Below, in pieces: positions 14,873 to 56,800 of a DNA stretch of 64,000 bases. Made by a program: the position numbers and the translations under genes. The stretch comes from Haliotis cracherodii. Its lineage: Eukaryota. Location of the stretch: NCBI RefSeq assembly GCF_022045235.1, contig NW_027266343.1, forward strand, positions 29,326,001 to 29,390,000. Reading direction: 5' to 3'. Every line of letters begins with the position of its first letter. The first letter of the stretch is position 1. Under the pieces are notes generated by a model that was given only the letters and a program-made list of their open reading frames with translations, was not told where the DNA came from and searched no databases.

Positions 14873-15387
14873 CTCTTGACCTCGTGATCAGGTTCCCTTT
14901 GAACTTTGACATCTGGGCCCCTCCTCGCCAAGTGGGTGTCTTAGGGAATCAGTAATTTACTGTTATTCTAATTAATTACTAACATGTGATACAAAATATA
15001 GCCTATTGATTTGGAAAGTTATATTCATGAGCATTATTAACCACGTAACATCCTAATTATCCTCTTATTGATCCATTTCCAACAACCACCCTCTTCCTCC
15101 TGTACTCCTATCTTCTGTCTCTTTCTACATGTCCTTCTCTCCCTCCCTGTCAGCGTCCTACTGGGAGGTACATGACCGTCCTTGAACCCTTGTCAGAACT
15201 GCCTGTCCCTCCCACCTCTATCCCTGCCCCTGCCCCTCTCTCTGCCTCCGTCCCCCGTGATGCCCCTCACTTCGTCGATATCAACCTGGATGATGACGAC
15301 ACCCCGACCCAGTCCTTAGTTGGAGTCTTGCTGTCACGTGTGTCTGGATTCTTGAGGAGAGTGTTCCGTGTCAAGATGGACGCTTAG
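14873..15387 (+). CDS. Putative small orphan gene, copy A (exons 14873-14931 and 15154-15387)
   Basis: Polypyrimidine tract plus cag acceptors at 14872 and 15153, donor CAA|GTGGGT. Frame is open across the splice: LDLVIRFPLNFDIWAPPRQ|RPTGRYMTVLEP...VKMDA*. Confidence 0.5.
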
Positions 15388-16009
15388 AGTGACATCTTGC
15401 TACCTCTTGGACCTTGTGTCATAATAATTTCCTTGGAGCTTTAGAATACGTTTAAAAAATAAATGATATAGTGCTCTCTACATTTTGGACCTTTCGGACA
15501 TTTCTTACTTTTGAGGCATTTTTCGGGTATTTTGATCATTTTGCTATTTTTCGACTTGGAATAAATACGTTTTTAAATACTAAACCTTCAGTGTTTTTAG
15601 ACTTTAAAGGGAATTTGGCCATTTTGGATTAAATTTTGAATGATGTTTATTGTTATATGCTGTTTACGTTTTTGGCTCTTTCGGACACTTTTGGCTTTTA
15701 AGACTTTGGACTTCATTAAATAATTATAATTCAATACTTGTTGTTGTTTTGTTTTTTCCATTGAGTCGTTTCCCCTTTAGTCACGTTGTTACCTACAATC
15801 TCCTTGGTTTGTCAGCCCCCTATACCCGTGTGCTTGTGGGTTTCACCAAAGTGGTAAACATCTACAGGTAAACAAACAAGATATGACAAGACATGCATTG
15901 TGAGCATAGAATATGTCACACAATAGGTTCACATGCAGTGGGGCGGGCATACCCTGTCCGGTTGAGCCCAACTGTTGGCAGTATTTGAGGGCTACTGTTA
16001 CTTCTCTTT

Positions 16010-16166
16010 CTTATGTCAACCGCATTAGCAGTATTCCAGCTACAGAGAGTTTATTGACTGATATTTGGGTACAATGACAAGCGGTCATCCGAGACACTGA
16101 CCACCTGATCCACGGACTTAGTCGCCTCATGCACAAGGACCAGTTCTAACCCGGAAACACACAGGG
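16010..16166 (-). mobile_element. Diverged relative of the family-3 SINE-like element
   Basis: Reverse complement reads ccgggttagaactggtc..gaggcgactaa..ggatcaggtggtcag..tagctggaatactgct. Truncated equivalents occur in the other units (e.g. ~168-285). Confidence 0.65.
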
Positions 16167-17659
16167 TCAGCAAGGTGCTCACCTTGAGTATCCAAGATAC
16201 GTTCAATTAGTAATTCTCTACGACTGCACTTACGATTTGTTCATATATTTCGAAGCAAAATTATTTTTCTCTTAGCGGAACTAATTGCAGAAAAGGAACG
16301 GAAATGGTTTGACGTTGTTATTTCATGAAAACAGACATTAGCAAGGCCAAAGCCGTGAATATATTTTAATGACAATCGTTTAGAATAGAATATTTTAGGT
16401 GCTTACTCGTAATATTACATTGATTAATGAAATATACAAATTTACTACTTTACTACTACTTTATCACACTTCGTTTTAGAGTTCTCAATTTTACCTTTGC
16501 ATGGGCTCCCATTCAGCGCGACTGCATTAAAGCTGTCGCCAAGAGAATGGATATATGTTGGATACGCACTCTGTTTTCAATTCTATAACACTTACGTCAC
16601 TACAGTACTAATTTACTGCATTAAGTTTTAGAATTCTCAATTTTTCTTTTCTGTGCGACTTCTTTAAAGACGTTGCCAAGTGCATTTACGTTGTACATAA
16701 CACGCATTCTAGTTTCAACGAAACACACATAAACGCTTACACGTTAGTTTTCAGTGAGAAACAACAACACTAGAGTAAATAATATTTTCGATTGATTACA
16801 GTTCAACATGTCGGAGTTTATCTGCACGGTATCGTATTGGCACGTAATTTAAGGGACGCAACTCGTGTTCTCTTGGCAGTATCGTATGTAAATAAAGGGA
16901 CGCAACTGCATGCGTCTCATAGTAAGGCAAACACCTCCCTTGGGTGTGAGTCTGGGTTTTGCGCCGCTTTTAGCAATATCACGGCGGGGAACACCAGGGT
17001 CCACTTGCACAAAGCGGTTCTATCGTTACAATTATTGTAAATCCTAAAGATCGCGATCTTACGCTTTGGCTTCAATCGCCACCCACTTGTACAAAGCGAA
17101 TGTAGGCTATGATCATTGTAAGCTACAAACGAAACTTACAATTGGTCCGGACCAATCTTAAGTAGCTAAAATCGTTGCAGTCCCTCAATAAACTTGACAA
17201 AATGGCGTACAAGACTTGGTCTGTTTCACATAAATAATCTGCTTTACGTTCAAACATTGCCTCTTTATTTTGTTAAACTTAATGGTTCTAATTGGCACTT
17301 TAAAAATATTAAGATCCAGGATCCCGTTCCACAAAGCCATCGTAGCGCTACGACTATCTTTCAAAACCCATCTACAAGCAAATGGCAGAGGCACTAGCAG
17401 CGCGAGTCCCAACCCCCGAGGATGTATATACCAGATACCCTGCACCTGTATCCACCAGTACACTGGAGAAACCCTTAGACCCCTCAACACAAGACTCAAA
17501 GAACATCGGACCTCTGTTAGCAAACTCGAACAAAAATCAGCTATTTCCGAACACATCCTGAAGAACATAAACCATAACATCATGTGGGAAGCCACCAAAG
17601 TCCTGTCTACCAACAAAAACAACTGGCGACAAAGGAAAGCCATTGACATCTCTATGGCT

Positions 17660-54601: not shown

Positions 54602-55135
54602 CTCTTGACCTCGTGATCAGGTTCCCTTTGAACTTTGACATCTGGGCCCCTCCTCGCCAAGTGGGTGTCTTAGGGAATCAGTAATTTACTGTTATTGTAA
54701 TGAATTACTAACACGTGGTAGCAAAACATATACTGCTGATTTGGAAAGTTCATGAATATTATTAACCACGTATCATTTTCACTCACGTCCTTATAACATC
54801 CTAATTATCCCCTTATTGATCCATTTCCAACAACTACCCTCTTCTTCCTGTACTCCTATCTTCTGTCTCTCTCTACATGTCCTTCTCTCCCTCCCTGTCA
54901 GCGTCCTACTGGGAGGTACATGACCATCCTTGAACCCCTGTCAGAACTTCCCGTCCCTTCCACCTCTATTCCCGACCCTGCCCCTCTCTCTGCCTCCGTC
55001 CTCCCTGATGCCCCTCACTTCGTCGATATCAACCTGGATGATGACGACACCCCGACCCAGTCCCCAGTTCGACTCTTCCTGTCACGTGTGTCTGGATTCT
55101 TGAGGAGAGTGTTCCGTGTCAAGATGGACGCTTAA
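54602..55135 (+). CDS. Putative small orphan gene, copy E (exons 54602-54660 and 54902-55135)
   Basis: Same splice sites; the stop is TAA instead of TAG at the same position. Confidence 0.5.
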
Positions 55136-55937
55136 AGTGACATCTCACTACCTCTTGGAACTTGTGTTAATAATTACCTTGGACCTTAAGAATACTTTTA
55201 AAAAATAAATGCAATAGTGTTCTCTATATTTTGGACCTTTCGGACTTTTTTAATCATTTTTGATCATTTAGGGCAATTTTGCTATTTTTGGACCCCGGAA
55301 TAAATACTTTTTTAAGTACTAAACCTTCAGTGTTTTTGGACTTTTTAGATACTTGGGCCATTTTGGATTACTTATAGAAATACGTTATGTGCTTTTGGCT
55401 CTTTCAGACACTTTTGGCTTTACACTTTCAAGATTGGACTTCATTAAATCATTATGATTCAATATTTATTGTTGTTTTGTTTTTTCCATTTAGCCGTTTT
55501 TCCTTTAGTTATGTTGTTGCATGCAATCTCCTTGGTTTGTCAGCCCCTTATACCCGTGTGCTTGTGGGTTTCACCAACTGTTGGCAGTATTTGAGGGCTT
55601 TTATGTATGTTAACCGCATTCAGCAGTATTTCAGCTACAGGGAGTCTATTGACTGCTATCTGGGTACGATGACAAGCGGTCATCCGAGACACTGACAACC
55701 TGGTCCATGAACTGCACAGGGACCAGTTCTAACCCGGAAACACAAAGGGTCAGCAAGGTACTCACCTTGAGTATCCAAGATACGTTCAATTAGTAATTCT
55801 CTACGACTGCACTTACGATTTGTTAATATATTTCGAATCTTAATTATTTTTCTCTTAGCGGAACCAAATGCAGAAAAGGAACGGAAATGGTGTGGTTTTG
55901 CTATTTCATAAAAACAGAAAATAGCAAGGCAAAAATA

Positions 55938-56800
55938 ATCCCTCCCACCTCTATCCCTGCCTCCGTCCTCCGTGACGCCCCTCACTTCTTCGATATCAAC
56001 CTGGATGATGATGACACCACGACCCAGACCCAGTGGGAGTCACGTGTGTCTGGATTCTTCAGGAGAGTGTTCTGTGTCAAGATTGACGCTTGGAGTGACA
56101 TCTTGCTACCTCTTAGAACTTGTGTTAATAATTACCTTGGACCTTTAGAATACTTTTGAAAAACAAATATGTGTTCTCTACATTTTGGACCTTTCGGACA
56201 TTCTGAAAATATTTGCACAATTTCATCATTTTGATATTTTGGACCTTGCAATGAATACGTTTTAAAAATCTAAACTTTTTATGTATGGGAAATACTTGAT
56301 ATATAAATAAACAAAGATAGATTGTGCTTTTGACCTTTATGAAAATTTGTTTACATTTTGGCCATTTCGGACAAACTTTCAACTTAATTATTCAAAAATT
56401 AGTTATAACCATTAAAGATTGGCTTGATTTTCTAGCTCCATGTTTTTGTTGTGATATTACACACAAGCTTAGTTAATAATGACCCATTTGAGATCAAGTC
56501 ATTTACCCTACTTCAATGCCAGACTTGTTCTGGATCCTTGAGGAGTGTTTCCTGTCAAGATAGATGCTTGGAGTGACATCTTGGTACTTCTCGGAAGTTG
56601 CGTCATATAATGACCACATTGAATCATTAGAATACATTTAAATACAAAATAGTAATACTTTGTGCTATAGGCATTTTGGACCCTTTCGAACATTTGCGGT
56701 TTTCACTTTTCACAAATGAACGTCATTTATACATTTTGACGTTTTAACGTTTGTCTTTACTTGATTAAATTGATTACCAACCAGTATTAATTATTAAAGA
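55938..56800 (+). pseudogene. Two older truncated copies of the orphan gene's last exon and 3' region (~55938-56420 and ~56520-56800)
   Basis: PPTSIPASVLRDAPHFFDINLDDDD...SRVSGFFRRVFCVKIDA with the stop changed to TGG. The second copy reads ggatccttgaggagtgtttcctgtcaagatagatgcttggagtgacatc. Confidence 0.75.

What the first reader, a model, noticed from the sequence alone, without database searches (positions are those of the whole stretch)
14873..56800. A ~9-kb macrosatellite apparently built around a small spliced orphan gene
Seen: most of the unit is riddled with unit-specific indels, yet the 59-nt exon, both pyrimidine-rich acceptors, the GTGGGT donor and the 234-nt last exon are indel-free and in frame in all five copies. 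Silent changes occur (TTG/CTG, CTG/CTT, CCT/CCC, AGG/AGA, stop TAG/TAA), although A versus B also shows about 8 replacement changes. Two older copies of only this exon and its 3' region close the array, so this segment was duplicating before the present unit formed. The peptide is a Pro/Ser-rich linker, an acidic motif FVDINLDDDD (fits a LIR-type F-x-x-I core) and a basic amphipathic tail (VRVFLSRVSGFLRRVFRVK). Inference: a lineage-specific amplified gene family whose duplications carry TE debris along.
Basis: partly seen in the sequence, partly recalled or inferred. Interest (0 to 1): 0.75.

Follow-up and report, generated by a model that had tools for sequence, protein, structure and literature searches.

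The report
Abalone-only small gene in tandem array
The ~9-kb repeat is a head-to-tail array of complete three-exon genes for a 103-residue, mostly disordered protein found only in abalones; the genes are real and under selection but already listed in the public annotation as "uncharacterized", and their function is unknown.

Summary
The window carries five head-to-tail units, with stop-codon spacing of 13.1, 8.5, 8.8 and 9.3 kb. Each has the 59-nt exon and the 234-nt last exon intact, in frame and free of indels. Two decayed copies of the last exon close the array.

It has a conserved promoter-like block, a 5'UTR and ATG plus 18 nt, and lies 2.3-2.6 kb upstream of the 59-nt exon. It completes a 103-aa ORF.

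All five window genes, and five more on the same chromosome, match NCBI XP_ proteins of Haliotis cracherodii ("uncharacterized protein") letter for letter. The array has nine genes over about 90 kb and starts left of the window. A tenth, inverted copy lies about 290 kb away.

The family has at least 58 last-exon copies on 11 contigs. I found it only in four Haliotis species.

Exons are conserved while introns decay. Eight independent paralogue pairs give pN/pS 0.48 (P = 2e-5). One RNA-type contig shows the exon 1-exon 2 splice. No exon 2-exon 3 joint was listed.

The protein has no known domain. It is predicted to be disordered apart from a cationic amphipathic C-terminal helix.

The scan met this family before: s1-820429 (adjacent window, same array) and s1-841665. 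This is an ordinary lineage-restricted tandem gene family, and its function is untested.

The parts
1..56800 (+). Window part of the tandem array: units A-E plus the tail of the preceding unit at 1-~1000. The array continues left of the window.
   Evidence: self-blastn; own-genome DNA search
12220..12380 (+). Unit A exon 1 (approximate 5' end; ATG at 12362, donor after 12380)
14873..14931 (+). Unit A exon 2 (59 nt)
15154..15387 (+). Unit A exon 3 (231 nt + TAG). The protein equals P0014.
25336..25496 (+). Unit B exon 1 (approximate 5' end; ATG at 25478)
27989..28047 (+). Unit B exon 2
28292..28525 (+). Unit B exon 3. The protein equals P0001 (XP_071089736.1).
33845..34005 (+). Unit C exon 1 (approximate 5' end; ATG at 33987)
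36528..36586 (+). Unit C exon 2
36831..37064 (+). Unit C exon 3. The protein equals P0020.
42826..42880 (+). Unit D promoter-like block: ACGTCACGTGAT, TCTCGCGAGA, TGACGTCG. It is conserved in paralogues on other chromosomes.
   Evidence: TCTCGCGAGA in 26 of 31, CACGTG in 25 of 31, TGACGTC in 29 of 31 copies
42848..43008 (+). Unit D exon 1 as far as an RNA-type contig covers it (ATG at 42990, donor GTATTT after 43008)
   Evidence: table 8 record 1 and joint 43006->45322 (cut +2)
45324..45382 (+). Unit D exon 2
45627..45860 (+). Unit D exon 3. The protein equals P0022. AATAAA lies 164 nt after the stop.
51886..52046 (+). Unit E exon 1 (approximate 5' end; ATG at 52028)
54602..54660 (+). Unit E exon 2
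54902..55135 (+). Unit E exon 3 (stop TAA). The protein equals P0019.
55940..56199 (+). Decayed partial copy of exon 3 (from codon ~25) plus 3' flank. The stop is lost.
56523..56615 (+). Second, older fragment of the exon 3 end plus 3' flank (81% identity)
38377..39970 (.). ~1.6-kb dispersed repeat inside the intergenic part of unit D's predecessor interval. It is present in the younger units and absent from the left units.
3993..12038 (.). 8-kb insertion specific to unit A, a mosaic of interspersed repeats
17315..22598 (.). 5.3-kb insertion specific to unit B, a mosaic of interspersed repeats

Best explanation
This is a tandemly arrayed, abalone-restricted gene family, not an anonymous satellite.

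Shown:
- Each 8-9-kb unit is a self-contained transcription unit.
- It has a compact promoter-like block with CRE-like, E-box and TCTCGCGAGA motifs.
- Exon 1 holds the 5'UTR plus ATG and 18 nt. Exon 2 is 59 nt. Exon 3 is 231 nt plus the stop, followed by a conserved AATAAA.
- The product is a 103-aa protein.
- The coding exons are held by purifying selection on the N-terminal motif (DLVIRFPLNFDIWAPP), the acidic F-x-x-I/V motif and the C-terminal helix. The Pro/Ser linker is free or diversifying.

Inferred:
- The array grew by repeated unequal crossing-over of whole units. Unit A is the oldest, and there are two young blocks (four left copies; B-E).
- Transposon insertions were copied along with the units or landed in single units.
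- The protein is an intrinsically disordered adaptor that sits on a membrane through its cationic amphipathic end helix and presents short linear motifs to partners.

The biochemical function is untested.
For: Array and units.

Exon 1 and reading-frame phases: the only blocks shared between this unit and C3 arrays are the promoter/exon 1, exon 2 and exon 3; alignment A1; 19+59+231 nt is in frame.

Annotation: pieces of all 5 window copies and 5 other C80 copies equal ten different NCBI proteins of 103 aa.

Splicing: run X1 has a contig joining 43008|45324 with GT..AG. In X1, X2 and X4 the exon bins stand above nearly all intron bins (for example X2 exon 2 bin 1379 against 4.5-17 beside it). 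The exception is one intron-1 bin over a dispersed repeat.

Selection:
- In 35 paralogues exon 2 is 96.9% identical with 0 gaps and exon 3 is 88-96% identical. Introns are 66-86% identical with hundreds of insert columns.
- 8 independent pairs give pN/pS 0.48, P = 2e-5; without the linker 0.37, P = 4e-6.
- By region, dN/dS is 0.13 (start of exon 3), 1.7 (linker), 0.5 and 0.39.
- All 42 genomic matches of at least 84% identity have no internal stop.

Other species: orthologues or paralogues exist in H. rufescens, H. asinina and H. rubra.

Protein: no Pfam family, no PDB sequence match. The AlphaFold model has mean pLDDT 59.8 with only helix 81-97. The helix has hydrophobic moment 0.71 and charge +5.
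Against: - No exon 2-exon 3 joint was listed in the one read-laying run. That splice rests on the NCBI models, the conserved GT/AG sites and the reading frame.
- The runs are only guessed to be RNA, and intron-containing contigs are present too.
- Overall dN/dS is moderate (0.45-0.67). Within the five window copies alone it is not distinguishable from neutrality (8 silent against 12 replacement codons).
- Third codon positions of exon 2 and of the helix-coding part are far less variable (0.04-0.10) than introns (0.14-0.34). Something besides protein coding may therefore contribute to exon conservation, such as gene conversion, splicing signals or an RNA-level constraint.
- The functional reading of the protein rests on sequence patterns and a low-confidence model.
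Confidence: 0.85

Rival explanations
1. The 'exons' are part of a mobile element, or a gene fragment carried by one. Their copy number and conservation would then reflect transposition, not host function.
For: The family lies on 11 contigs. A very abundant ~1.6-kb dispersed repeat sits 0.85-1.3 kb downstream of the gene both here and in the C3:21.07 Mb array.
Against: Between arrays only the promoter block and the three exons are alignable; introns and flanks are not. That is the opposite of a young mobile block. No transposon protein family is found in the product or in the unit's ORFs. Codon-level purifying selection is present. Copies are mostly in local head-to-tail arrays.
Confidence: 0.04
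2. This is a recent, selectively neutral segmental amplification. The ORFs are intact only because the copies are young, and the NCBI models are automatic over-prediction.
For: Within the array, copies differ by only 1.2-8%. Within-window dN/dS is 0.47 with few changes.
Against: Paralogues whose introns have diverged to 66-77% identity keep exon 2 at 97% with no indel and keep exon 3 open. Independent pairs reject neutrality. The protein is 82-90% conserved in H. asinina. A spliced contig exists.
Confidence: 0.05
3. The array works as a cluster of alternative 5' cassettes (promoter + exons 1-2) that splice to a shared downstream exon, in the manner of protocadherin or UGT1A clusters.
For: One contig of run X1 continues from the end of exon 2 into 28 letters that match window 61378 onward exactly. 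That site has an acceptor-preceded exon 6.7 kb beyond the last unit.
Against: Every unit has its own terminal exon with a stop and AATAAA, and these are what the NCBI proteins use. The downstream exon would add only 20 codons before a stop. It resembles old dispersed repeats. It rests on a single contig.
Confidence: 0.04

Closest known systems
Human gene-bearing macrosatellites: CT47 (4.8-kb unit, 4-17 copies), RS447/USP17 (4.7 kb), TAF11-like (3.4 kb, with TE fragments). Source: passages of PMC5687341 read.
   Same: Kb-scale head-to-tail units, each with its own promoter and a complete protein-coding gene. Narrow taxonomic range: CT47 is in human and chimpanzee only, and this family is in Haliotis only. 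TE fragments are carried inside the unit.
   Different: The units here are much less homogeneous (1.2-8% divergence in the gene region, kb-scale unit-specific insertions). The same gene also forms several other arrays and single copies on 11 contigs. Copy-number polymorphism between individuals, a hallmark of macrosatellites, was not tested. The proteins are unrelated.
Other abalone-only tandem gene arrays noted by this scan (for example s1-829593, s1-847030)
   Same: Small spliced genes, abalone-restricted, many tandem copies, annotated only as 'uncharacterized'.
   Different: They are different protein families. I did not examine those loci.
LIR (ATG8/LC3-interacting region) adaptors. The motif definition [W/F/Y]-x-x-[L/I/V] with an acidic context is recalled, not taken from a call.
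   Same: F-x-x-[I/V] with acidic residues inside and after it is kept in 18 of 18 aligned family members and lies in a region predicted to be unstructured. A terminal amphipathic helix could provide membrane attachment.
   Different: This is a pattern match only. The same stretch also fits a SUMO-interaction-type hydrophobic/acidic pattern (recalled). There is no homology to any known adaptor and no binding data.

Membership tests
Gene-bearing macrosatellite / tandemly arrayed gene cluster | Head-to-tail repetition of a kb-scale unit | tested here: met
   Nine same-strand copies on C80 are spaced 7.8-9.3 kb in 6 of 8 intervals. The other two intervals, 13.1 and 15.7 kb, carry large insertions.
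Gene-bearing macrosatellite / tandemly arrayed gene cluster | Each unit holds a complete gene (promoter, all exons, polyA signal) | tested here: met
   All five window units have the promoter block, three intact exons, GT/AG sites and AATAAA at +163 to +173. Each equals an NCBI protein.
Gene-bearing macrosatellite / tandemly arrayed gene cluster | High homogeneity of units | tested here: inconclusive
   Gene-region divergence is 1.2-8.2% between units. Whole-unit blast identity is 83-99%, with kb-scale unit-specific insertions.
Gene-bearing macrosatellite / tandemly arrayed gene cluster | Copy number varies between individuals | not tested
LIR-motif (ATG8-binding) adaptor | Conserved aromatic-x-x-aliphatic core with acidic context in a disordered region | tested here: met
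   F-x-x-[I/V] is present in 18 of 18 sequences of A3, followed by D/E-rich residues. The region has no predicted secondary structure. This tests the pattern only.
LIR-motif (ATG8-binding) adaptor | Physical binding to an ATG8-family protein | not testable with these tools
   Needs a pull-down, ITC or a co-fold.
Transposable element or TE-carried fragment | TE-type protein domains, or a mobile block with shared non-genic sequence and ends | tested here: not met
   No Pfam family in the product or in unit ORFs. Between arrays only the promoter and exons align. Element termini around dispersed copies were not searched.
Secreted cationic host-defence peptide precursor | N-terminal signal peptide ahead of an anionic propiece and a cationic amphipathic peptide | tested here: inconclusive
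   The acidic DDDD stretch and the +5 amphipathic helix are present. The N-terminus carries D9, R13 and D19 and looks unlike a signal peptide by eye. No signal-peptide predictor was available.

The most novel reading that the evidence does not exclude
The family encodes membrane-tethered short-motif adaptors (ATG8- or SUMO-type binders), or unconventional host-defence peptide precursors. On this reading, their repeated tandem amplification and fast-changing Pro/Ser linker (dN/dS about 1.7) reflect an abalone-specific dosage or arms-race adaptation. The near-invariance of exon 2 even at third codon positions would reflect a second, RNA-level function or exon-targeted gene conversion between chromosomes.
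Probability: 0.1. Interest if true: 0.6.

Novelty: new member of a known kind. Interest (0 to 1): 0.3.

Why it matters
The finding shows that a repeat that looks like a macrosatellite in raw sequence is a functional multigene array. It also adds one more case to a pattern the scan keeps meeting in the black abalone: genus-restricted small-protein genes amplified in tandem.

For abalone biology, the family has at least 58 last-exon copies and clear selection, but no known domain and no paper that I could find. It is a candidate for lineage-specific cell biology or defence. That matters in a species devastated by withering syndrome, the disease named in the abstract listing of PMC9709981.

It is not a new kind of genetic system, and the genes are already in the public annotation.

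Tried and rejected
Searches and tests that gave nothing:
- Tandem Repeats Finder cannot see the 9-kb period, because its longest period is 500. Self-blastn was used instead.
- Pfam on the exon-3 peptide, on unit ORFs and on three full-length database proteins: nothing, even at E <= 10.
- PDB sequence profile search: 0 hits at E <= 10.
- ESM Atlas: one unnamed cluster at 0.76 for P0022, below the tool's own noise level, and nothing for P0029.
- AlphaFold gave pLDDT 59.8. I therefore ran no fold search, because a low-confidence model gives meaningless matches.
- The HMMER scan of 1.84 billion representatives with the exon-3 peptide found only the family itself, plus one 3,694-aa wasp protein with no aligned stretch. 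I take that as a low-complexity artefact.
- Looking for LTRs or inverted repeats around the two big unit-specific insertions found none.
- Paper searches found nothing on this family: 'Haliotis' + 'tandem' + 'orphan gene' (6 papers held all three terms, 5 listed, none relevant); 'abalone' + 'macrosatellite' (0); five LOC identifiers (0). Supplementary tables, where such identifiers would sit, were not available.

Readings rejected:
- I considered that the 26% non-coding divergence of the inverted copy L011 against its 98.7% exon 3 showed exon-only conversion. I rejected that because its intron 1 is 1 kb shorter and probably misaligned. The exon 2-intron 2-exon 3 block is 94% identical overall.
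- The exon 2-exon 3 joint was not among the joints listed. The 45393->455xx 'skips' there are paralogue or other-species contigs that still contain a divergent intron 2, not splices.

The joined three-exon model was never sent to any search. I searched with the exon-3 peptide alone. For the full length I used proteins that the databases returned (P-ids).
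Full report
WHAT IS THERE.
The window is G000:C80:29326001-29390000 and contains no N. Self-blastn shows that 1-56,800 is a head-to-tail repeat. Units match at 83-99% identity and are interrupted by unit-specific insertions.

The junction motif CGCCAA|GTGGGT occurs five times, against 0.11 expected by chance.

Pattern search fixes the 59-nt exon at 14873, 27989, 36528, 45324 and 54602. 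It fixes the 234-nt last exon at 15154-15387, 28292-28525, 36831-37064, 45627-45860 and 54902-55135. All copies have the same length and all are in frame. Splice sites are identical in all five: GTATTT...CAG for intron 1 and GTGGGT...CAG for intron 2. An AATAAA lies 163-173 nt after every stop.

THE MISSING FIRST EXON.
I compared one unit with units of distant arrays on contig C3. Apart from short dispersed repeats, only three blocks aligned: 42801/42823-43099, the 59-nt exon and the last exon.

The first block (alignment A1) has three parts:
- a conserved ACGTCACGTGAT / TCTCGCGAGA / TGACGTCG stretch;
- about 140 nt of leader;
- ATGAGCGCATACACCCAAG followed by GTAT.

The reading-frame phases fit exactly. 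The 19 coding nt of exon 1 plus the 59 nt of exon 2 make 26 codons, and exon 3 starts in phase 0. That gives 103 codons.

The ATG block is intact in all five window units, with one silent change in E. In 31 family copies where I located exon 1, TCTCGCGAGA is present in 26, CACGTG in 25 and TGACGTC in 29. That these are promoter motifs is my recollection of the literature, not a test.

ALREADY ANNOTATED.
The exon-3 peptide found nine protein clusters of 101-104 aa, named 'uncharacterized protein', in Haliotis cracherodii, H. asinina and H. rufescens. Their sequences begin MSAYTQALDLVIRFPLN..., which is exactly the three-exon model.

I compared the exons piece by piece, without joining them. Window copies A-E equal P0014, P0001, P0020, P0022 and P0019. 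The four copies left of the window and one inverted copy equal P0024, P0021, P0016, P0018 and P0017. These are NCBI XP_ records on a 60,096,789-bp contig, the same length as C80.

So the organism is the black abalone, and every unit is already a gene model in the public annotation.

EXTENT OF THE ARRAY AND THE FAMILY.
The own-genome DNA search shows nine same-strand copies on C80, from 29,300,876 to 29,381,191. An inverted copy lies at 29,011,831. Intergenic unit sequence starts near 29,293,200, so the array spans about 90 kb.

Gene-region divergence separates three groups:
- a young left block of four copies, 1.2-2.8% apart;
- unit A, 7.7-8.2% from all others, the oldest;
- a right block B-E, 1.7-5.7% apart, with C and D closest.

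The array ends with 578 nt of post-gene unit sequence.

Across the genome, the exon-3 peptide gives 58 matches at E <= 1e-5 out of 139 candidates, on 11 contigs. Of these, 42 are at least 84% identical over at least 75 of the 77 residues, and none of those has an internal stop. Several lie in their own 7-10-kb arrays on C3.

More distant branches exist:
- P0011, 112 aa;
- P0026 and P0027, 110 and 109 aa;
- P0028 and P0029, 111 aa, the latter a cluster of 23 sequences;
- P0025 from H. rubra.

Earlier notes of this scan speak of more than 100 members. My own count supports at least 58 plus these further branches, no more.

IS IT SELECTED?
Within the five window copies there are 0 indel events in the 293 coding nt of exons 2+3. 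Introns have 15.6-16.4 per kb and the 3' 200 nt have 55 per kb. At the intron rate about 4.7 indels would be expected, so this is suggestive only.

Codon changes among the five are 8 silent plus the stop change against 12 replacements, giving dN/dS 0.47. On its own that is not decisive.

The family settles it:
- In 35 copies with both exons, exon 2 has 96.9% mean pairwise identity and no gap. Exon 3 has 88-96%, with only in-frame indels in the linker. Intron segments have 66-86% identity with 29-439 extra insert columns each, and the 3'UTR has 58-77%.
- Eight phylogenetically independent nearest-neighbour pairs were drawn from 17 representatives, with L036 left unpaired. They give 55.5 synonymous against 76.5 non-synonymous differences, pN/pS 0.48, P = 2e-5. 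Without the linker the figures are pN/pS 0.37 and P = 4e-6.
- By region, dN/dS is 0.13 for RPTGRYMTILEPLSELP, 1.7 for the Pro/Ser linker, 0.50 for the acidic motif, 0.39 for the C-terminal part and 0.38 for exon 2.

Of the 40 copies I extracted (35 fetched and 5 in the window):
- 38 had a recognisable exon 2, of which 37 were open. L020 has a stop and an altered donor.
- 36 passed my strict exon-3 filter.
- Two of the four that failed, L018 and L022, are nevertheless open.

One unexplained point remains. Third-codon-position diversity is only 0.04-0.05 in exon 2 and 0.07-0.10 in the last two exon-3 segments, which cover the acidic motif and the helix-coding part. Intron diversity is about 0.14-0.34 (one minus the identities). 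Protein coding alone does not account for the nucleotide conservation there.

TRANSCRIPTION.
No listed holder of the last exon is on record as RNA. Fourteen small runs are guessed to be RNA. I laid four of them, from four organism codes, on 42700-46200 at 88% likeness.

- Run X1 has one contig, at depth 600, that joins 43006 to 45322. With the stated +2 shift this is 43008|45324, GT..AG, skipping 2315 nt. That is exactly the predicted exon 1-exon 2 splice.
- Another X1 contig covers 42848-43008 and stops at the exon 1 end.
- Exon-containing bins stand above nearly all intron bins in X1, X2 and X4. The 44923-45039 bin, over a dispersed repeat inside intron 1, is far higher than any exon bin in all four runs. 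The tool warns that contig depth is not a measure of expression, and exons also collect contigs from all paralogues.
- X10 holds almost nothing but a dispersed repeat and one exon-3 contig.

Against my reading, no exon 2-exon 3 joint was listed, and contigs that retain intron sequence exist in all three runs. That splice therefore rests on the NCBI models, the conserved sites and the reading frame.

THE PROTEIN.
- No Pfam family, no PDB relative by sequence, and nothing usable in the ESM Atlas.
- An AlphaFold model from an 18-sequence alignment has mean pLDDT 59.8 and pTM 0.16. It has a single helix at 81-97 and no other secondary structure.
- Invariant positions across the 18 sequences cluster in four places: D9-L10, R13-F14-P15, N17 and I20-W21-A22-P23; P38, S40 and L42-P43; D62, F66 and L71; and the hydrophobic face of the helix, V82, V89, F92, V96 and F97.
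- The helix segment VRVFLSRVSGFLRRVFRV has a hydrophobic moment of 0.71 and net charge +5. Only 3.4% of shuffles of the same residues reach that moment.

My reading is a small disordered adaptor with a membrane-seeking end helix and conserved short motifs. It is inference, and the LIR-type interpretation is no more than a pattern match.

THE REST OF THE UNIT.
About 5-6 kb of each unit is non-genic.
- The segment 38377-39970 is a ~1.6-kb dispersed repeat, with 16,810 first-look candidates and 80-92% matches on many contigs. It is present in the younger units and absent from the left block, where the flanks are contiguous.
- The 8-kb insertion in unit A and the 5.3-kb insertion in unit B are mosaics of interspersed repeats, with 7,068 and 3,813 first-look candidates. 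No terminal repeats were detected.

COMPARISON WITH WHAT IS KNOWN.
The closest described things are human gene-bearing macrosatellites: CT47, RS447/USP17 and TAF11-like. I read passages of PMC5687341 on these. Those arrays also have kb-scale units, each with a promoter and a whole gene. CT47 has a narrow taxonomic range, and the TAF11-like unit carries TE fragments.

This array differs in three ways. Its units are much less homogeneous. It is one of many arrays of a dispersed family. Its copy-number polymorphism is untested.

I found no paper on the family. For the abalone genome papers I saw only the search listing.

The scan has met the same family twice before. One note covers the adjacent window with the four left copies (s1-820429), and the other covers a 101-aa branch elsewhere (s1-841665). 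Both follow-ups reached the same verdict.

VERDICT.
This is a real, selected, spliced, abalone-restricted tandem gene family that is already annotated and functionally unknown. It is interesting as a candidate lineage-specific biology, but it is not a new kind of system.

Noticed in passing
window 61378-61520 (+): One contig of run X1 runs from the end of exon 2 into 28 letters that match 61378 onward exactly. That site is preceded by tttcag and would add 20 codons, a stop and AATAAA-type signals. This would be a read-through or alternative terminal exon 6.7 kb beyond the last unit. The stretch resembles old dispersed repeats (68-77% matches elsewhere).
   Followed up: partly
window 60508-64000 (-): A convergent WD-repeat gene lies here. 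The piece at 60508-60759 is most like WDR34, the cytoplasmic dynein 2 intermediate chain 2 (PDB 6rlb_D, E = 1.4e-9). The piece at 63100-63315 matches the Pfam WD40 model (E = 1.1e-5, 26.1 bits, just under the 27-bit cut-off). The extra + strand exon above lies between its exons.
   Followed up: partly
window 45324-45382 and 45786-45860, and their copies: Third codon positions of exon 2 (diversity 0.04-0.05) and of the last two exon-3 segments, the acidic motif and the helix-coding end (0.07-0.10), are far less variable among paralogues than introns (0.14-0.34). The conservation goes beyond what the protein requires. Gene conversion, splicing enhancers or an RNA-level role were not distinguished.
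   Followed up: partly
window 44952-45024 and 40314-40465: A short dispersed repeat inside intron 1 and in the intergenic part. It draws contig depths of 25,000-51,000 in all four runs laid, with A/C-rich tails in the loose ends. It looks like an abundant, transcribed SINE-like element.
   Followed up: no
L016, L021, L022, L024, L025, L032, L034, L035 (C3 arrays), about 180-240 nt after the stop: In the C3 arrays a 27-29-nt copy of the very end of exon 3 recurs downstream of the stop (96-100% to query positions 206-232/234). Partial duplication of the gene's 3' end, as at the right edge of this array, is therefore a recurring feature of the family.
   Followed up: no
window 42866-42885 and paralogues (A1): The leader of exon 1 carries upstream ATGs. 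Where the C3 paralogues read GCCATGACG, the C80 copies read GCCTTGACG. The short upstream ORFs therefore differ between arrays.
   Followed up: no
window 4336-4533, 11161-11589, 21707-21890, 56908-57313: Small tandem repeats (periods 99, 160, 79 and 170 nt) lie inside the unit-specific insertions and just right of the array.
   Followed up: no
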